Positions 939 to 51,696 of a DNA stretch of 64,000 bases are shown piece after piece (the stretch's first letter is position 1; every line of letters starts with the position of its first letter). Origin of the DNA: Vitrella brassicaformis CCMP3155 (lineage: Eukaryota; Protista; Chromerida); NCBI GenBank assembly GCA_001179505.1, contig CDMY01000332.1:52553-116552 (forward strand). Direction: 5' to 3'. Position numbers and translations under genes: made by a program. A model generated the notes under the pieces. That model did no database searches. It was not told the origin of the DNA and worked only from the letters and a program-made list of their open reading frames with translations.

Positions 939-1544
939 ATGGCTGACGTGTCCGAGGCGTTTCGCAGCTTTGCTGGCGGGGCGAGCGAACTGGACGGCCG
1001 GCAGTTCGTCAAACTCTGGTTAGCATAGCAGCCTGGGGGTGGGGTGGACGGTGACGGCCCGGGCAGCCCCATGCCCATGTTCTGTGTTTGTGTTGCTGTG
1101 CAGCAAGGTGAGGCCACGTGCTGTGGGGCTCCACCTCGGGCGGTCGATTGCTCGGCGTGCGCACCTTTCTCTCTCTCTCTCGCTCTCTCTCCGTGTGTTC
1201 GATTCTGTCTGTGTGTCTGTCTGTGCGCTTGTGATTGGTCGACCAGGACTGCAGAATCATCGACTCCAAGTGCACTTCCACTGACGTACGTGAGCGACGG
1301 ATGGCAGAATTTGCCGTCGTTTCTTCATCCATTGAATGATAAGAGTGGTATTCGTTGCCTGCCTGCCTGGCTGGCTGGCTGGCTGGCTGGCTGCAGGTGG
1401 ACCTGATCTTCGCCAAAGTCAAGCAGAAGGCCGCAAGGAAGGTCGACAGCAGGGAGGGGAGGGAGGGAGGGAGGGAGGGACAGGACAACCAAGCAGCTGA
1501 CTTATGGGAGACACGACGCCCTTCCCATACACATGGTTCCGGTG

Positions 1545-1579
<35 letters not shown>

Positions 1580-2491
1580 TGTGTTGGATGTTGTCACCAT
1601 GTCAGATCAATTTGTTTGAGTTTGAGCAGGCCCTGGAGCTGCTGGCCGAGAAGAAAAAGATCTCCGTTTCTGACCTCAAGAACAAAATCGGCTCCTCACA
1701 GGGTCCGTCTGTGAACACACACACTCAGACACAGAGACAGAGAGAGATAGAGAGAGAGAAAGGGACACCATCCGTGTGGTGTGAATGATGTGTGTGTATG
1801 TGTGTCGGTGGCTGGACGGGTGCCCTCACTGCACGTGGCACGGTGTCAGGACCCGTTCTCACCGGCACCAAGACCGAGGCTGTCAAGTAGGACACACACC
1901 ACACACGAGACCACGAGACACACACTGATCTTCATATCCTCTGTCTGTATGTCTCTCTCTCTGTACCTGTGTGTGTGTGCAGGTTCTATGACGACAAGTC
2001 GACGGTAAATGACCACAGTGGGAATGAAGGGGAATGAGGGCGTGTGAGGGTCTGCTGGCATTGTGTGACACCTACCTGTCTCTCACTCACTGCTGACTCT
2101 GACTCTGACTCTCACTCTGCTGCATCGGGTGACTGTGGCCCCGGTGCGGTGCTTGCAGTTCACGGGTGTGCACCAGCACGGCGGTCCCTCGACGGTCGAC
2201 AAGGGGCGAAACAAATTCTCAGACCTCTCTGAATTCTGCGGTACACACACACACAGACAGAGGCACGTGTGTGTGAAGGGCAGAATGTGCGCACACACAC
2301 ACCCCTAAACATAAACATACCTCTGTCTGTATCCCATCGGTGTGTCTTGTGTTGATCGCATTGCCTGCAGACCGCACCCCTGCCGACGTCAGAGGTGCTG
2401 CAATGACTGACTGGCAAAAGAGCTGGCTGATTTGTGGGGCCGTGAATGTGTGTGTGCCGGTGTGAGTGCAGGCATCAAGTCGCTCAAGTAA
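939..2491 (+). CDS. TPPP: Short-type TPPP/p25alpha tubulin polymerization-promoting protein (flagellar FAP265-like), multi-exon
   Basis: The spliced product reads MADVSEAFRSFAGGASELDGRQFVKLCKDCRIIDSKCTSTDVDLIFAKVKQKAARKINLFEFEQALELLAEKK...GTKTEAVKFYDDKSTFTGVHQHGGPSTVDKG...SDLSEFCDRTPADVRGIKSLK*. These are the canonical p25alpha motifs. It includes a 4-nt exon at 1104-1107. Confidence 0.93.
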
Positions 2492-2931
2492 CCGACTAAC
2501 TAACGGGCTTCATACTTGCACCCACACATCGGCACCGAAATGGACGAGGGAGTAAATGTTGTATGGTGTCTGCTGCCTGATGAACGGGGGTTGGGTGGGA
2601 GGGAGGGAGACCCTGAAGTGCGCTGTGTGTGGGGTATGGGCGTGTGTGCACCTAGAGAGGGCTTCATTTCGTTTGCTCCCTGTCTGTCTGTCTGTCTGAG
2701 TGAATGAAGTATGTGTGTGGATGGATGGATGGATTGCCTCATACTGACCGACGAACGATATACAGAGGTTCACGCACCAATGTAGACATCTGAGCCAGCG
2801 CATTGGATGACTCAATCACTGACTGCATTTAAGTGCTCAGCGGTCCGGGTCGACCCAGGCATGTATCCACACAAACACTCGACTCACACAGACCCTGCCT
2901 GCCTGCCTGCCTGCCAACGTCCCTGTCTGTC

Positions 2932-3777
2932 TTATCTGTCACCAGATCGTCTTGCCGTCCTATCGCCTCCCATGAGCCTCTCTGCCTGTTCCCCCATCCC
3001 CATCTCCTCACTAACATCCGCGTCCTCTCTCTCGACCCCGCCGCCCAACTTGCTCAGCTGCACCATCAGCAGGTGCAGCAAATAGCCAGGGGGGCCCGCC
3101 GCAAACGTGACAGCCAGGGCAAACGAAGTGTTGATGCCCCTCCGGAGGCCATCGAGATAGATGAGCTGACCAGCCAGGAGGTCCCAGGTAAGTGCATGTG
3201 CCCACTCCTCGGCAACGAAGATGGGAGATTCGCGCATCTGTACCATTGCTGAGAGCCGGATGACCGCCTCGCTGACGAAGAATGTCCCCAGTTCTTGCGC
3301 GTCAGGCTGCCCGAGACCGTAGACGAACATAGAGAGCTGACAGAGGGCCGTGAGGGCCACGGGGATGGGTGTCTTCATGACGCTTTGCGTCAGGGACCAG
3401 TTCGGCAGGAAGACCATGAGCAGCCAGAAAGGTGTGACCCCGCAATTGGCCAGTGTGAATGCAATCGCCTCGGGTGTGTCCAGCTCGGGCGTGGGCAGGG
3501 AGAGGGCAAGCGACGTACCACTGTGCCGGTGTTGGCGTCGACTCATCGGCCGCCAATCGGTCCCCCGTTTTTGCGGTGACAGAGAGAGCAGCGGTCTGCG
3601 GAGTGGCTGCGTTGTGAGTTCCGCTGTGGCCGGGACGGGGGAGACGAATGCCGAAGGACCGGCTGCGGCCGCTGCATTGCAGAGGGCTGACAGCTTTGTC
3701 AAGATCAGCAGGGGCAGTAGCCGCAGAAATCGCTGCTCGGCTGTGAGTGACAATGTCCTCAACATCACCCTCAACAT
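2932..3777 (-). CDS. ABA4: ABA4-like (DUF4281) membrane protein, intronless, with a probable bipartite plastid leader
   Basis: Motifs PFWLLMVFLPNWSLT, WAHALTWDLLAGQLIYLDG and GPPGYLLH match the ABA4 family. The N-terminus has a hydrophobic stretch, then SAFV, then an S/T/R-rich transit-like region. Confidence 0.85.
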   Translation of the reverse strand: MLRVMLRTLSLTAEQRFLRLLPLLILTKLSALCNAAAAAGPSAFVSPVPATAELTTQPLRRPLLSLSPQKRGTDWRPMSRRQHRHSGTSLALSLPTPELDTPEAIAFTLANCGVTPFWLLMVFLPNWSLTQSVMKTPIPVALTALCQLSMFVYGLGQPDAQELGTFFVSEAVIRLSAMVQMRESPIFVAEEWAHALTWDLLAGQLIYLDGLRRGINTSFALAVTFAAGPPGYLLHLLMVQLSKLGGGVEREDADVSEEMGMGEQAERLMGGDRTARRSGDR

Positions 3778-4104
3778 GAATGCTAGTTGGCTCCGCAGGC
3801 AGCTCGCAAACGCGTAAGGACACTCCGTTAAACCTTGCATGCAAATTCTGATGGTAGCTGTTGTGTGTTTGGCTTTCACATGCTGTCAGTGACACGCACT
3901 GACTGTCATGACAGGGTACTTCCCAACTTTCGGCATGACGGTGGATGATTCAAAAATCATCACGAGATGCAGGCAAGTGATACCCACCCAGTCACATGGC
4001 ACAGACACATTGCCATATGACTCACTTGTTACCCTCAAAGTCGTACAGCAGAACATGTTCGCGCCGCCCGCCAGGCGTCCACCAAATATGGTCACCTTTT
4101 GCTT

Positions 4105-6767
4105 TCATCTATTTTCCTGCCATGTCTCAATGACAAACGAAAAGCCTGGACAGAGCTCGGCCTACTAGAAAGAGCAGCATTTGGTAAGGGCCCCAACATA
4201 CCTTCATTCTTACCGGCCCAGCATCGCCCCACTTCTCCTCACCCATGGCACGCATAGTGTAGATCGCAAACAGCATGTACCAAGTCGATATACTACACAA
4301 GAAGCCAACATACAGGACAAAGAAAAGTGACGGTGCAATTGATGAGTCTCACCAGCAAAGGCCAGTCCAGAGACACATAAGGCATCTGCACCATACTACA
4401 CTGCTCTCATATTCCGCTCGCACCATTGGCAGGTTGTTCCACCGAATTAACACAACAAACAGCACGTGGAGAGACGAACAACAAATGGGCCGCAATGTGA
4501 GGTATACGCTTTCGGGTCCCTGTGTTCCTTACCGCTTCGAAGGCACACTCGATGATGACCAGGACAAGTAGACGAGCCATACCTTGTAGAAAGCTGACAT
4601 GCGACGAATCACTGCCCCATATCTGATTGCTTATGAGAACCACCAGATTCGAGAAAAGCAAGACGGTGACCTCCAGAAAGGCCCACACCCTGATTTGCTC
4701 CGATAAAGCTCTCAGGTAGCGAGGGCTCACGTCCAAAGAGGCGAGAGCCGATTGTAGATTGGTCGGGGGGTGAGACACGATCGGCTCTTCCGCAATGTAG
4801 GAAAGGCCCGCTCTCAGTATTCGGCTACTCGTCATGCTGGCATTTTCGTGTCTCGCAGTGTCGTGGTCCTTGCGCGAGGACAATGAGGTGATTTTTCTCA
4901 TTTTCTCTACCGCCGCAATAGTTTTGCTGTCATTAGAGGAAGGCCGCGTTGCCTTTCGCCTCCTGTCTCTCAGAAATCTTCGCGCAGCGATAAAGAGTAG
5001 TATCCAGTATGGTAGGAAGATGTCACTCAGGAGGTCCAATCTGAAAGCAGCAAGCCAGCAGATCGATGCAAATACAAGAAAAGGCAAGTGTCTGCGCCAT
5101 GGCCAGGCCGCTTACAACGAAATCAAGACCGAATAAAAAATCTTTGCGGACAGCCTAACCATTTCCGCCTGCAGCAGGCGAGGGTAGATCACGAGAACCA
5201 TCTTAATCAGAATTGCGAGGTATCCGTTGAGCGTCGGTGGCCCCTCCTGCGTCGACACACATATATATCGACACACATATACATACTTCCTTTTACTTGT
5301 TTTCGAAGCTCACTTTCATCGATCTCGCAAGCTTCGAAATGAGCGAGATAATGGGTAGCATGGCAAGGACGAATATGAGCGCCCTTCGCGTCTTGTCAGC
5401 ATCAGTTGTCGTTGCTTTTACTGTAGAGCGTACGAAGTGTCCCAGCACGCCCAGAGCTACAATGCCCGCCGCGCAGGCAGTGCCTGCTTTGACTGCATAG
5501 CCCCACTTGTTCCTGACGCCCAGCGACTTTGCAGCTGTGTAGAAGTGTGCGTACGGCCATATCAAGGAGCACACCAAGAAAAGCCAAAAGACGCATCGTA
5601 GCGAGCGGCGATCCCAATGAGCGTGATAAGCCACCGAAACCATAATGCTGAGCGTTAAGGGTGTTACGACCAACCACCATGACGTCTTGAGGCGTGATAT
5701 GATCTTGGGCAGGTTGCATCCATCGGTCAGGTGGAGAAGGAAGAGGTAGACCGTCAAGACCATCACAGCCCGGCTAACGATGTCAAAGGTGAGGCCGACT
5801 ACGGTTGAATCACAGGCGAAGCCCATAGCGATCACATAGAGGATGAAAATGCCCGCAAGTGCCATGCCCCTGAGCAGCTTCCTCGTAGTGACTTTGATGA
5901 CTTGACAGACAGTCACACGGAGGGGCCCAGGGTCAAAAGTGGCGCCCACTAGCACCTGCTGCGAGCTGCCGTCGGGTCTTAAGACCGTCTCGTATGTAAG
6001 CCTTGTCTCCTTCTCTTCATAAGCAGCGTCATAGCCTGCCGCCTCGCGAAACCTGCCAATGGGGGATGCAGCGACGAGACATGACACAAAAAAGGGGCCA
6101 CCCTGCACTTTTCGCAGTGGTTCTTCTCTTATTGCTCACTCGTGCACCAATGCATTAAGCGCCTGCTCCTCTCGTGGCAACGCATGACCCTCCTCTGCGT
6201 AATCTTCATTGGCGTCCACGTTGTTCGCGTCATCGGCCATGCTCGATCGTCTCATTGTTGCGGCTGTAGTGACTGACGCGAAGGTCGCTCGTCTCTCTTG
6301 CTTCTCGTCGCCGAGCTCAGCTGCCGTGATAGCAACGGGCTCTCCACTCTTAGTAGCCACCGCGCCGTCAGTGTCATGCTTGTGTTCTTCGCCTGTCAGG
6401 TGGCCGGCTGTAAGGGTACTTTGCGGCGAGAACCTGAGCGTCACCTCGGACACAGTGGCGCATGGCTCGTCACCGTAGGCTTGGGAAGGCCTTGCGGTCT
6501 CCCAAATGGGATGATCATCCGACACGGACGAAGCCCCCCCGCTGATCTCTGTCATCAAACAGCGGAAAGAAAGGCCCCATGTGATTGCTCCTTGTGTGTT
6601 CATTCATCAATCATTCATTCGTGGCAGGGGGGTGACTGACCTCTTCGTAGACCGTTATTCATGGACCGAAAGTCGTCTTGACGCCGCCCCTCACCTCCGT
6701 CATTGCTTTGTACACAGCCCGCATCCATTGGGGTCTGCCGATTCAGTGCCGAATCTGCCACACTCAT
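4105..6767 (-). CDS. Multi-exon, multi-pass membrane protein of unknown function (ends approximate)
   Basis: ORFs 6136-6603, 5293-6108 and 4407-5087 join in frame through introns, e.g. 6053-6139 gives ALVHE|FREAAG. There are many transmembrane segments after an acidic N-terminus. The 3' exons are uncertain. Confidence 0.6.
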
Positions 6768-48512: not shown

Positions 48513-48896
48513 AACGACAATCGTGACCTCGATGCCTGCAGGGTTCCAAACCCTGCGAGCTTAGACTTGCAAGGGACACGGCGAAAGGAAAGTCTCAGCA
48601 GGGGGACCCGGTGGTCGCTGGGTGTCACACATCACCAGCGAGAGTAGTCGTCCATGTCTGAGTCGTCATCGACACATCCCACGGTGCCCTCGTCGTACGA
48701 GGCGGAAAACCAAGATGGGCCGGAAACCAAGAAGACGGTGCGGCAAAACAGAATCTCAGCAACGATGCTCAGCGTAAGCCGCACACACTAATGCAGGCAG
48801 CCATGGAATGGATAATGCCACACAGGCCCAGATCCCCCTCTCCCTCTCTCCCTCTCTCTTTCTCTCTCTGATCTGTGACGGATGGATGGGTAGATT

Positions 48897-50726
48897 ATGG
48901 AGCGGCAGGTGTGGTGAAGTGAATGCAGCAAGGACCATGGCACACACATGCATACATAGCCTTCTAGCTGCACTACCCGTCGGTGCATGTGCTTGTGTTG
49001 ACTGCAGGTGCATCAGCTGCGTCGTGAGCTCGTGGACTTCTTCCTGCTGGCAGGGGACCCCAAGCTCACTAACAGCCAGAGGAGCATGCTGCCGGTAGGT
49101 GCACGTGTGGATCAAGAGATCAATCAATGAATGGCATGCATGGCTGTGTTGCTGTGTGGTTTATGTTATGATGGGATGGATGCCACCAGCCCTTTGTCGA
49201 CGTGATTGTATTCGGCCCCTCCGGCAGCGGCAAGAGCAGCCTCATTCGCACATTCTACAGAGGTAAGTGCGTAGACTAGACGAGTCCCAATAACACGAGT
49301 GTGTCCATTCCATGTACTGTACGCCTGTCTGTCCAATCCAATCAGCGCTGCACAACACGTCGGTGCTCCCGCGGGACCTCAGTGAGAGGGTGGTTGTGCA
49401 GGACACCTTGCGGAACGAGGGGACCACGCAGTACGTCAAGGCGGTCATCAAACAGCGGGAACAGGACACTGACGGACGGCCGACGTCATCGGGAATCATA
49501 CTGCATGGTCAGCCAGCGCGGCGTGGCGTGAGATGGTCTGTGTGCACTGCAGTGGATGTATCTTATCTGCTGTGTGTGTGAGTGAAGATACGAGGGGCCA
49601 GATATGGATGGATCGCAAGGAGCAGCAGCAGCTCGATGTCATCATACAGGTAACCTAGATCTGATCCATCATTAGGCGCACTGCCGTTGGTACTTACTGT
49701 CACGTGTCGGCAGGGTCGCATCAAAGACGACGTCACAGTCGAGCAGCGCGATCGAAGATACGGTAGGAGGGAAGGAGGGGAGGGAGGGACACAAGTACGT
49801 TGACCGACAGACACGTTTTGACTGAGTAGTTGGCTCATCCTTCCGTCAGCCCGTTTGTTGTGGGAGTTTTGGAGGTCGGAAGCAGACCTCTTCCCGCCTG
49901 AAATACTCAATAAACGATCAGGTTGGTGCCCTTCCAGCGCGCACACACTCACGGACCACACGCACAAGATGCAGTCATTCTTGCATCCATCAGGACTGGC
50001 CACGCGGCCCCACGCGTTGATTTTTGTGTTTGATGGGAGGTGCGCAGACAGACAGACAGACAGACAGACAGCCCGCTGCGGACAAGGGCACGGTGTGCTG
50101 TGGTGTGTTGTGTTGTCATGCAGCATGGATGAGATTCCCAATGGCGAGGAGGAGACTGATTTCTACAGAGAGGTCATATCCATGGCGCGGCGGAAAGGTA
50201 CACAACCACACACACGTTGTCCATCCATCCATCCATCCATCCGTGCATTTTATCTGCAGGTTACTACTATCCGCAGATAGTGCTGACTCGTATCGACAAG
50301 GTGGAGCAGCAGCTGCCGCAGGACGTCAGCCAGGCAGAGGCGGAGGTCATCCTCAGGCAACGACTTGGTACAGACACACACGACGACGAGTCGCACACAG
50401 GGAGAGTTTTTCTCGGTATGTGTGTGTGTGTTGTCTGTAGACTCCAAGATCGAGGCAGTGGTGCTCAACCTGGGCGTTTCTCGGTCGTCGGTGCACTTTA
50501 TCGAAAACTATCACGCCGACGGAAGTAAGTCAAGTCTAGAGGGCACAACCACCGACCGTCACACACCCAACCCATGTGCCGTACCTACTTGTGTGTGTGT
50601 CGTGCAGTGTGTCAGGATCTGTCCATCGACTTCCACGCGCTGCGTGTGCTGCACGAGTGTGTGCAGCACGGCGACACATTCATCCGCTCAGCTATGAAGA
50701 ACCGACCAAGGTGTGTCATCCAATGA
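48897..50726 (+). CDS. IFI44/IFI44L-like P-loop GTPase with a C-terminal CaaX box (start uncertain, 48765-48897)
   Basis: Spliced VIVFGPSGSGKSSLIRTFYRAL (G1), NEGTT (G2), LHDTRG (G3), RPHALIFVFDGS, QIVLTRIDKV (G4), LGVSRSSVHFIENYH, DFHALRVLHECVQHGDTFI; ends MKNRPRCVIQ*. Confidence 0.8.
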
Positions 50727-51696
50727 GATGAGTGGGTGACCCACAGAATCGGCGAATGGGTGGGTGCGTTCAGCGCCTTTGGGCTGGTTGGTATGTGCGG
50801 TGGGTGCAAGGGGGTGGAGATGTGGTTTGTGTAGCATAGGAAGAACGAAGGGTTTTTGCTGTGTGTCGAGTGAGACATTTGGCGTTTTATGGACGTAAGA
50901 AGGACCATTAAGCGTCCCGCGATGCTGGACCAATGGGTGTTGTGCGATGCGATTTGATGAGACCGTACAGTACATGGTGTGTGCCGTGTCGGCCGGTTGC
51001 TGTCGAAATTTGTGTGCATCTGAGCACTGCGGTGCGTAGGTGTGTTCATTGCGCCGTTGTACAATTTGTCTGTTCCCTCCCTCCCTCCCCACCAGCCGTT
51101 CTGACACACCACACAGCAGGCAGGCAGGCAGGCAGCTACGGCCACAGAAGCAGCAGAGGCCTTGACCGATGGATGCGTGGATGTGTAGAAGGTGTCTGTC
51201 TGTCTGGCCGTCTGCTCTGTCTGTCTATCACTACGCCCCCTGCCTGTCTGCGACTGCGGGTGTGGCTGCTGCTGCCGTGCTGCAATGGTGGTCTCACGGT
51301 ATATCTATCTCTCTACGCTGCTTGTCTGTCTGTGCGTGTGGGTGTAGTCGATCCCCGTCTGTCTGTCTGTCTGTAGGGTGGCCGCAGCTCAGTATACACA
51401 GCGCAATCTGGTGTACATCACATCAGCCACCACACCCCACCCACCCAACAGCCAGACAGCCCATCCGTCCATCCATCCATACTTACAACCATAAACCCGC
51501 ACACCCACACTCACTCACACCCACACCCACACCCACACACAGCCAGCCACTCTTTGTTCTCTCGCTCCTTTGCTTATCTATCTCTTGCCCGCATCCATCC
51601 GTCCATCCATCCATCCATGTGCACGTAGGATTGGTTTCTATGTTGCTTGGTTGGTTGGTCGGCGACATGGCATGGTTTGGTGTGGTGTGGTGTGTG

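What the first reader, a model, noticed from the sequence alone, without database searches (positions are those of the whole stretch)
48897..50726. IFI44-like GTPase (animal interferon-stimulated family) in an alga, ending in a prenylation box
Seen: complete G1-G4 motifs and flanking motifs in the order found in the IFI44/IFI44L GTPase domain (H-x-(L/V)-x-(F/Y)-V-x-D, LTxxD, LG-x6/7-(V/I)-x-NY, terminal helix). It has no TLDc domain, and it ends in a basic stretch plus CVIQ*. Established: IFI44 and IFI44L are vertebrate antiviral interferon-stimulated genes of poorly understood mechanism. Inference: this may be an ancient, membrane-targeted member of the family and a candidate pre-animal immune GTPase.
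Basis: partly seen in the sequence, partly recalled or inferred. Interest (0 to 1): 0.8.

Follow-up and report, generated by a model that had tools for sequence, protein, structure and literature searches.

The report
Lipid-anchored IFI44-like GTPase of alveolates
This is an expressed single-copy gene of the alga Vitrella for a GTP-binding switch protein with a conserved lipid-anchor signal, whose nearest named look-alike is the GTPase half of the animal antiviral proteins IFI44/IFI44L, but which belongs to a strongly conserved, uncharacterised family of ciliates, dinoflagellates and chromerids and shows no sign of an immune role.

Summary
Window 48654-50726 (+) is a 13-exon gene of Vitrella brassicaformis. 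Spliced transcript contigs from four runs confirm every intron and add a 15-nt micro-exon that the public 351-aa annotation lacks. The mRNA runs unspliced through 50711, so the protein (356 aa) really ends in CVIQ.

It has G1, G2, G3 and a TRID-type G4, and no TLDc domain. It is one orthologue of a family of more than 180 sequence clusters. Every named source is an alveolate, and members are 37-60% identical to it. Nearly all end in CaaX or a Cys-rich tail.

No IFI44 sequence could be fetched, so homology is supported at fold level only. Strong conservation and single copy argue for a housekeeping, membrane-anchored GTP switch, and nothing here supports an immune effector role.

The scan has noted other 'IFI44-like' GTPases elsewhere in this genome. 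A family-profile search of the genome matched only this gene, so those are not close paralogues. Verdict: partly supported; a new variant of a known kind.

The parts
48580..48653 (+). 5' UTR, as far as the transcript contigs reach. It holds no ATG and has an in-frame TAG at 48645-47.
48654..48773 (+). Exon 1, starting at the first ATG of the mRNA. It encodes 40 aa of a variable N-terminus.
48894..48908 (+). 15-nt micro-exon (IMERQ), missing from the public 351-aa annotation.
   Evidence: Present in all four transcript contigs. It fills a 5-residue gap against homologues.
49008..49094 (+). Exon 3, encoding the N-terminal helix.
49190..49262 (+). Exon 4, carrying the G1 P-loop FGPSGSGKSS (49211-49240).
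49346..49507 (+). Exon 5, carrying G2/switch I NEGT (49414-49425) and the first base of the Asp codon of the G3 motif.
49588..49649 (+). Exon 6, carrying the rest of G3, DTRGQ (49588-49601). The Gln sits at the Ras Q61-equivalent position.
49714..49762 (+). Exon 7.
49850..49921 (+). Exon 8, carrying most of the family-specific motif RYARLLWEFW..LFP (49756-49762 + 49850-49905). The motif is highly conserved but modelled with low confidence.
49994..50039 (+). Exon 9, carrying the strand PHALIFVFDG.
50124..50197 (+). Exon 10.
   Evidence: The transcript record positions are contiguous across both flanking introns.
50260..50367 (+). Exon 11, carrying G4 LTRID (50283-50297).
50441..50524 (+). Exon 12, carrying the G5-like LGVSRSSVHFIENYH (50470-50514).
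50608..50726 (+). Last coding exon: the C-terminal helix, KNRPR, the CaaX box CVIQ (50712-50723) and the TGA stop (50724-50726).
50727..51020 (+). 3' UTR. The transcript contigs end at 50986-51020.

Best explanation
Window 48654-50726 (+) is a single-copy, transcribed, 13-exon gene of Vitrella brassicaformis. It encodes a 356-aa GTPase that belongs to a strongly conserved family whose named sources are all alveolates.

Shown:
- The protein has a complete nucleotide-binding set: P-loop GxxGxGKS, switch-I Thr in NEGT, DTRG followed by Gln (Gln or His across the family), and a T(R/H)xD G4 with an invariant Asp.
- It models as a TRAFAC-class G domain with an added N-terminal helix and a C-terminal helical extension.
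- It ends in a canonical CaaX box.

Inferred mechanism:
- The cysteine is farnesylated (X = Q). The tail is then trimmed and methylated, which tethers the protein to a membrane. The genome encodes prenyltransferase alpha and beta subunits and ICMT.
- At the membrane it works as a GTP/GDP switch that is competent for hydrolysis.
- The invariant insert RYA.LLWEFW..D.ELFP is a likely partner- or membrane-binding surface.

Its G domain is the closest non-animal look-alike found here of the IFI44/IFI44L GTPase module. It lacks the TLDc domain. Its conservation pattern points to a core cellular role, not an inducible antiviral one.
For: Gene model and expression. The public protein P0001 equals the model minus the micro-exon.

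Family:
- 185 clusters at E<=1e-3. Named sources are only Vitrella, dinoflagellates (Symbiodinium, Durusdinium, Polarella, Effrenium, Prorocentrum, Togula, Protoceratium) and ciliates (Stentor, Stylonychia, Tetrahymena, Paramecium, Pseudomicrothorax).
- 43 invariant columns, including all the G motifs and the CaaX Cys.
- Cys at position -4 in 83 of 138 full-length members (X = Q 62, F 8, M 6, L 6, I 1). Nearly all of the others end in Cys-rich tails.
- The residue after the G3 DTRG motif is Q or H in 175 of 176 members. G4 is TRID in 112.

Fold:
- AF2 model with pLDDT 80 and pTM 0.79.
- ESM Atlas by shape: IFI44 clusters at TM 0.65-0.69, and no AIG1, septin or Toc set among the 99 nearest models.
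- Language-model features: IFI44-like clusters score 0.97. For residues 140-351 alone, the first named hit is IFI44-like at 0.82.

Prenylation genes in the genome.

Single copy.
Against: - No alignment-based statistic links the family to IFI44. Three word-indexed searches returned no IFI44 protein.
- The IFI44 link rests on predicted-versus-predicted structures and on language-model features. These are not fully independent, and the tool outputs call them leads.
- The 0.82 score for the C-terminal part is below the 0.9 level that the tool treats as more than a lead.
- Prenylation, GTP binding and membrane location are all untested.
- 'Housekeeping' is inferred from conservation and copy number only.
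- Absence from apicomplexans or from other eukaryotes was not established. Two Atlas clusters of the same shape carry Mollusca or Streptophyta labels.
Confidence: 0.62

Rival explanations
1. It is an ancient antiviral or immune effector related to IFI44: a membrane-targeted GTPase that restricts viruses or other parasites of the alga.
For: IFI44 and IFI44-like clusters are the nearest named structural and feature neighbours. The same genome has a very large expansion of TLD domains, the other half of IFI44. Earlier scan notes report other IFI44-like GTPases there.
Against: The gene is single-copy. It is 37-60% identical across chromerid, dinoflagellate and ciliate members, with 43 invariant columns. 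That is unlike fast-evolving, lineage-expanded immune GTPases. No TLD match lies on its contig. PADLOC gives only P-loop-level hits. Spliced transcripts were assembled in four runs of three studies, with nothing on record pointing to infection.
Confidence: 0.12
2. It is a divergent member of the septin-like / AIG1-GIMAP / Toc group of TRAFAC GTPases with no specific tie to IFI44. The resemblance to IFI44 then reflects only shared membership of that wider group.
Against: Among the 99 nearest ESM Atlas models, no AIG1, septin or Toc family set appears, while five IFI44 sets do. Those align 259-283 residues, against 214 for Toc33. By features, AIG1-bearing clusters score 0.86-0.88 against 0.97 for IFI44-like. 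The family profile against a Vitrella AIG1-type ORF matches only the P-loop. No member reaches the Pfam AIG1 or Septin cut-offs.
Confidence: 0.22
3. It is a P-loop ATPase (ABC, AAA+ or STAND-like, DUF815), as automatic annotations of homologues say ('EcfA2', 'predicted AAA+ superfamily ATPase').
For: The best Pfam hits are AAA_16, AAA_5, ABC_tran, NACHT and DUF815, all below cut-off and all confined to the P-loop. A bacterial STAND kinase shares the same 16-residue P-loop string.
Against: The matches cover only about 20-60 residues around the Walker A motif. The whole-protein model matches GTPases throughout the top 50 rows of both PDB searches. The DxxG, T(R/H)xD and switch-I Thr motifs are invariant or nearly invariant.
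Confidence: 0.03

Closest known systems
IFI44 / IFI44L (interferon-induced protein 44 family), GTPase domain
   Same: It is the nearest named family by predicted shape (TM 0.65-0.69, 259-283 residues aligned, including the N-terminal helix and the C-terminal helical extension) and by language-model features. From my own recollection of the human sequence, which is a lead and not a test, the same motif order occurs there: GxxGxGKSS, D-x-x-G, hydrophobic-FVFD-(A/G)-S, LT(H/R)xD and x-NY.
   Different: It has no TLDc domain and carries a conserved C-terminal CaaX lipid-anchor signal. It has a family-specific invariant insert, RYA.LLWEFW..ELFP. It is single-copy and strongly conserved across alveolates and is not an inducible, expanded gene family. 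Sequence-level homology is not demonstrated here.
Toc33/Toc34 and AIG1/GIMAP GTPases (septin-like TRAFAC group)
   Different: No Pfam AIG1 match reaches cut-off. Comparison with a Vitrella AIG1-type ORF aligns only the P-loop. The anchor here is a prenyl group, not a C-terminal transmembrane helix. The extra insert and helices are not covered by these structures.
CaaX-prenylated small GTPases (Ras/Rho/Rheb type) and farnesylated CaaQ proteins such as yeast Ydj1 (CASQ)
   Same: The C-terminus is Cys-aliphatic-aliphatic-X, with X = Q/M (farnesyl type) or F/L/I (geranylgeranyl type). The G3 motif is followed by Gln, as in Ras DTAGQ. That X = Q directs farnesylation is established knowledge, stated from my own memory.
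   Different: At 356 aa it is about twice the size of a Ras-like domain. There is no NKxD motif and no Pfam Ras, Arf or Roc hit. The small GTPases rank below Toc33 structurally.

Membership tests
IFI44 / IFI44L family | P-loop GTPase domain with G1, G3 and a T(H/R)xD-type G4 in the family's order | tested here: met
   The motifs are located in the spliced protein and are invariant or nearly invariant in the 34-sequence alignment. That IFI44 has the same order is from memory only.
IFI44 / IFI44L family | The fold of the GTPase module is closest to IFI44 among known families | tested here: met
   ESM Atlas by shape: the IFI44, IFI44-like and TLD+MMR_HSR1 clusters have TM 0.65-0.69 by query and are the only named family sets among the 99 nearest models, apart from the protein's own family. 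Solved structures reach only TMq about 0.42 (Toc34). Both sides of the Atlas comparison are predicted models.
IFI44 / IFI44L family | Statistically significant sequence or profile similarity to IFI44 proteins (for example the PANTHER PTHR14241 model) | tested here: inconclusive
   Three word-indexed searches, including one tuned by query length to exclude the protein's own family, returned no IFI44 protein. The word filter cannot see relatives at about 20-25% identity. No IFI44 sequence was available for hhalign.
IFI44 / IFI44L family | N-terminal TLDc domain | tested here: not met
   No TLD hit in Pfam at E<=10. Only about 70 residues precede the P-loop. No TLD match on contig C332. TLD-less 'IFI44-like' clusters do exist in chordates (rows 4 and 9).
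IFI44 / IFI44L family | Induction by interferon, virus or nucleic-acid sensing | not testable with these tools
   The reads tool gave only assembled contigs, with no expression levels or conditions.
CaaX-prenylated proteins | Cys at position -4, followed by two mostly aliphatic residues and an X accepted by FTase or GGTase-I, at the true C-terminus of the mRNA | tested here: met
   CVIQ is followed by TGA, and the last exon is unspliced in four transcript contigs.
CaaX-prenylated proteins | The signal is conserved in orthologues | tested here: met
   83 of 138 full-length members have Cys at -4, and nearly all of the rest have Cys-rich tails (CFCFGG.., CFxxCF). The Cys column is invariant in alignment A1.
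CaaX-prenylated proteins | Prenyltransferase and CaaX-processing genes are present in the genome | tested here: met
   PPTA repeats at 2 loci, Prenyltrans beta at 3 loci and ICMT, all above the Pfam cut-offs. Rce1/Ste24 were not searched.
CaaX-prenylated proteins | The protein actually carries a prenyl group | not testable with these tools
   This needs metabolic labelling or mass spectrometry.
AIG1/GIMAP-Toc-septin GTPases | Match to the Pfam AIG1 (PF04548) or Septin (PF00735) model above its cut-off | tested here: not met
   No AIG1 hit. Septin is hit by 3 of 34 members at E about 3e-3, below cut-off. hhalign against a Vitrella AIG1-type ORF aligns 20 P-loop columns, Prob 35%.
AIG1/GIMAP-Toc-septin GTPases | Shared fold with solved members | tested here: met

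The most novel reading that the evidence does not exclude
The IFI44-type GTPase module predates animals. It survives in alveolates as a single-copy, lipid-anchored, hydrolysis-competent GTPase with a conserved cellular job, and animal IFI44/IFI44L arose by fusing this module to a TLDc domain. The unknown biochemical activity of the IFI44 GTPase domain could then be worked out in genetically tractable ciliates (Tetrahymena, Paramecium), which carry clear orthologues.
Probability: 0.3. Interest if true: 0.75.

Novelty: new variant of a known kind. Interest (0 to 1): 0.55.

Why it matters
IFI44 and IFI44L are among the most consistently induced antiviral genes of animals, yet what their GTPase domain does is still unclear. 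This work defines a well-conserved protist family with four properties:

- It has the same predicted fold.
- It is not covered by any Pfam model, and public records name it only generically ('G domain-containing protein', or wrongly 'EcfA2').
- It carries a conserved prenylation signal that predicts where it acts.
- It has orthologues in model ciliates.

If homology to IFI44 is confirmed, the family offers a simple, single-domain system for the biochemistry of this module and dates the module to before animals.

The work also corrects the public gene model by adding a missed 15-nt micro-exon, which restores a conserved IME(S/R)Q motif.

Tried and rejected
- Exon-by-exon Pfam scan: only P-loop noise.
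- The spliced protein has no reference, so it could not be sent to remote tools. The single exhaustive HMMER job went on the longest exon to recover the database copy, P0001. No exhaustive profile search of the family was therefore possible.
- Three attempts to reach IFI44 proteins with the word-indexed search all returned only the protein's own family. They were P0001 alone, a family alignment led by a 786-aa fused homologue, and P0130 residues 505-693 so that the length window excluded most family members.
- Pfam on all 34 alignment members, NCBIfam and PADLOC: nothing beyond the P-loop.
- PDB sequence and profile searches: P-loop matches and weak septin hits only.
- Homodimer prediction: no verdict, score 0.00. 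This is no evidence either way, and dimerisation is not claimed.
- Bacterial and viral relatives: genome contigs gave four loci that match only around the P-loop. One of them is a kinase-STAND NTPase that shares a 16-residue Walker A string. Viral contigs gave none.
- Paralogues in the same genome: none, by three exon queries or by the family profile.
- I looked for the other 'IFI44-like' loci that earlier scan notes mention, through MMR_HSR1 matches. The loci inspected were Obg-like (C576, C242) and AIG1-like (C666), so the noted loci were not found.
- Literature: no paper in the searched library describes IFI44-like GTPases in protists, dinoflagellates or ciliates.

Full report
**What is there**

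The region is a eukaryotic, intron-rich gene on the + strand. Three-frame translation and hand-splicing gave a model in which every intron is GT..AG and 62-234 nt long.

Public runs were found that hold only about 40% of the region's words. Laid on the window, four of them (three studies) each gave one contig of 1342-1407 nt with no mismatch that skips exactly the predicted introns. Intron-less contigs of this kind can only come from mRNA.

The contigs add one thing I had missed: 11 extra letters between 48773 and 49004. Together with the ambiguous GCAG, these define a 15-nt micro-exon, 48894-48908 (tag|ATTATGGAGCGGCAG|gtgtgg), in phase 0, encoding IMERQ.

The transcripts begin at 48580-48677. 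The first ATG is at 48654, with an in-frame TAG nine bases upstream and no other ATG in the leader.

The last exon is continuous from 50608 to 50986-51020 in all four contigs. The possible donor at 50711 is therefore not used, and the protein ends ...KNRPRCVIQ, with TGA at 50724-26. The product is 356 aa.

**Database copy and organism**

The spliced protein has no reference, so I searched the 53-aa exon 5 exhaustively. This returned P0001, a 351-aa 'unnamed protein product / G domain-containing protein' of Vitrella brassicaformis CCMP3155. It is identical to my first model, that is, it lacks the micro-exon.

In alignments, P0001 shows a 5-column gap exactly where homologues read (V/I/L)M(E/K)(S/K/R)Q. 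The micro-exon fills that gap. The public annotation is therefore slightly wrong.

**The family**

- P0001 finds 185 clusters at E<=1e-3. The listed ones are 35-61% identical to it over most of its length.
- Every source that names an organism is an alveolate. Dinoflagellates: Symbiodinium, Durusdinium, Effrenium, Polarella, Prorocentrum, Togula and Protoceratium. Ciliates: Stentor, Stylonychia, Tetrahymena, Paramecium and Pseudomicrothorax. Many more are unnamed environmental transcripts.
- A 34-sequence alignment has 43 invariant columns (351-aa numbering): F77-G-P-x-G-S-G-K-S-S86, N117-E-G-T120, D148-x-R-G151, L188-x-E-F-W192, P214-H, F221-D-G-S224, D261, H303, E306-N-Y308 and C348.
- The residue after the G3 DTRG motif is Gln or His in 175 of 176 sequences. 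These are the residue types that serve as the catalytic Gln of Ras and the catalytic His of EF-Tu (from my own knowledge).
- G4 is TRID, TRVD or THID.
- Exon-level and profile searches of the whole Vitrella assembly find only this locus, so the gene is single-copy.

**The C-terminus**

- Of 138 full-length members, 83 have Cys at position -4, with X = Q (62), F (8), M (6), L (6) or I (1).
- Nearly all of the rest, two environmental subgroups, end in Cys-rich tails such as CFCFGGKYY or CFATCFGGR.
- A C-terminal lipid-anchor signal is therefore a hallmark of the family and not an accident of this sequence.
- X = Q or M is the farnesyltransferase class, and F/L/I is the geranylgeranyl class (established knowledge; for example, yeast Ydj1 with CASQ is farnesylated).
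- The Vitrella genome encodes prenyltransferase alpha repeats at two loci, beta subunits at three loci, and ICMT.
- The preceding 'basic stretch' is weak (KNRPR) and is not conserved as such.

**What kind of GTPase**

- Sequence libraries cannot place it. In Pfam, NCBIfam, PADLOC and PDB sequences, only Walker A-level matches appear, to AAA, ABC, NACHT and DUF815, all below cut-off. This explains the misleading automatic names of homologues ('EcfA2', 'AAA+ ATPase').
- An AlphaFold2 model built on the family alignment is good: pLDDT 80 and pTM 0.79. The low-confidence parts are residues 1-28 and 179-199. The second of these overlaps the most conserved family-specific motif, RYARLLWEFW..LFP.
- Against solved structures the model is unambiguously a GTPase. 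Foldseek's top hits are Toc34/Toc33, mitofusin, EF-Tu and GIMAP7 at E about 1e-5.
- Against ESM Atlas cluster representatives, the protein's own family comes first (TM 0.80-0.83). Next come five sets named 'Interferon-induced protein 44(-like)' or carrying TLD+MMR_HSR1, at TM 0.65-0.69 by query. They align 259-283 residues spanning residues 20-351, which is 45-70 residues more than Toc33 aligns. No AIG1, septin, Toc or dynamin set occurs among the 99 nearest models.
- The language-model feature search agrees. IFI44-like clusters make up 22 of the 100 nearest (0.97), against 0.86-0.88 for clusters carrying AIG1.
- With the P-loop half removed, the first named hit is still IFI44-like, but at 0.82. 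The tool says that is only a lead.
- A Vitrella AIG1-type ORF, found in passing, aligns to the family profile only over the P-loop.

**Limits of the IFI44 claim**

I could not obtain any IFI44 sequence by reference. The three word-indexed searches returned only the protein's own family, even when the length window was used to exclude it.

No E-value or tree therefore ties the family to IFI44. The TLDc domain that defines canonical IFI44 is absent.

The genome does hold at least 130 six-frame TLD matches in clusters, but none lies on this contig.

**How it most likely works**

Shown:
- An expressed, single-copy gene.
- A complete and conserved set of G motifs, with a Gln or His at the catalytic position.
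- A G-domain fold with extra helices.
- A conserved CaaX box, and the prenylation machinery in the genome.

Inferred:
- The protein is farnesylated and sits on a membrane.
- It cycles between GTP and GDP states.
- The invariant WEFW insert engages a partner or the bilayer.

Because identity stays at 37-60% from ciliates to a chromerid, the role is most likely a core cellular one in free-living alveolates. Nothing supports inducibility or an arms race. A homodimer prediction gave no verdict, so dimerisation of the Toc/GIMAP kind is not claimed. No bacterial or viral relatives were found beyond P-loop strings.

**Literature**

- IFI44 homologues are reported among antiviral-response genes of cnidarians and molluscs, so 'vertebrate' is too narrow.
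- IFI44 is listed as the most divergent TLDc protein.
- No paper in the searched library mentions IFI44-like GTPases in protists.

**Earlier notes of this scan**

- One note on the neighbouring gene named the organism. One search confirmed it.
- Three notes report 'IFI44-like' GTPases on other pieces of this genome. My profile search shows they are not close paralogues of this gene. I did not find them among the MMR_HSR1 matches I inspected.

**Verdict**

- Observation: confirmed, with a corrected 5' end and an added micro-exon.
- Interpretation: partly supported. The IFI44-like fold and the prenylation signal stand. The immune role does not, and sequence-level membership is untested.
- Novelty: a new variant of a known kind, namely a TLDc-less, CaaX-anchored, alveolate-wide IFI44-like GTPase family that is not covered by Pfam or by the searched literature.

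Noticed in passing
window 48894-48908: A 15-nt micro-exon (IMERQ) is present in all transcript contigs but absent from the public 351-aa protein of this gene. It restores a motif that is conserved in homologues.
   Followed up: yes
window 50038-50080 and 50214-50251: Two introns of the gene consist largely of microsatellites: (CAGA)n directly after the donor at 50040, and (CATC)n in the next intron. The reads tool skipped them as repeats. An earlier scan note on this window describes microsatellite-bracketed introns.
   Followed up: no
G000, contigs C802, C242, C268, C326, C217, C483, C306 and others: There is a very large expansion of TLD (PF07534) domains in the Vitrella genome: at least 130 six-frame matches, many of them clustered on a few contigs. 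None lies on the window's contig, C332.
   Followed up: partly
L029 (G000:C666:281500-289500), ORFs 1423-2025(-) and 5434-6057(-): Two nearly identical tandem copies of an intron-less AIG1/GIMAP-type GTPase ORF (about 200 aa; LLGATGNGKST, DTVGF, VVTHTE).
   Followed up: partly
L027 (G000:C576:12000-20500): Three tandem copies of an Obg-like GTPase gene segment, interrupted by runs of N (withheld or gapped sequence).
   Followed up: no
proteins P0127, P0129, P0006, P0130 (Symbiodinium spp.): In several Symbiodinium annotations the orthologue is fused to unrelated sequence. In P0127 the N-terminal half of the G domain (about residues 400-635) and the C-terminal part (about 1215-1326, ending CAIQ) are separated by about 580 unrelated residues. 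This suggests a mis-merged model or a very long intron that holds other coding sequence.
   Followed up: no
window 51027-51228: Just downstream of the 3' UTR, many unrelated transcript contigs pile up on a (CAGG)n / CTGT-rich repeat, with very high summed depth and many loose ends.
   Followed up: no
L023 (Mariniblastus MAG, CBDDAC010000022.1), ORF 1675-5859: A 1394-aa bacterial protein that combines a Ser/Thr kinase, an nSTAND1 NTPase and an FGE-sulfatase-like domain. It shares an identical 16-residue Walker A string with the alveolate family and nothing else.
   Followed up: partly
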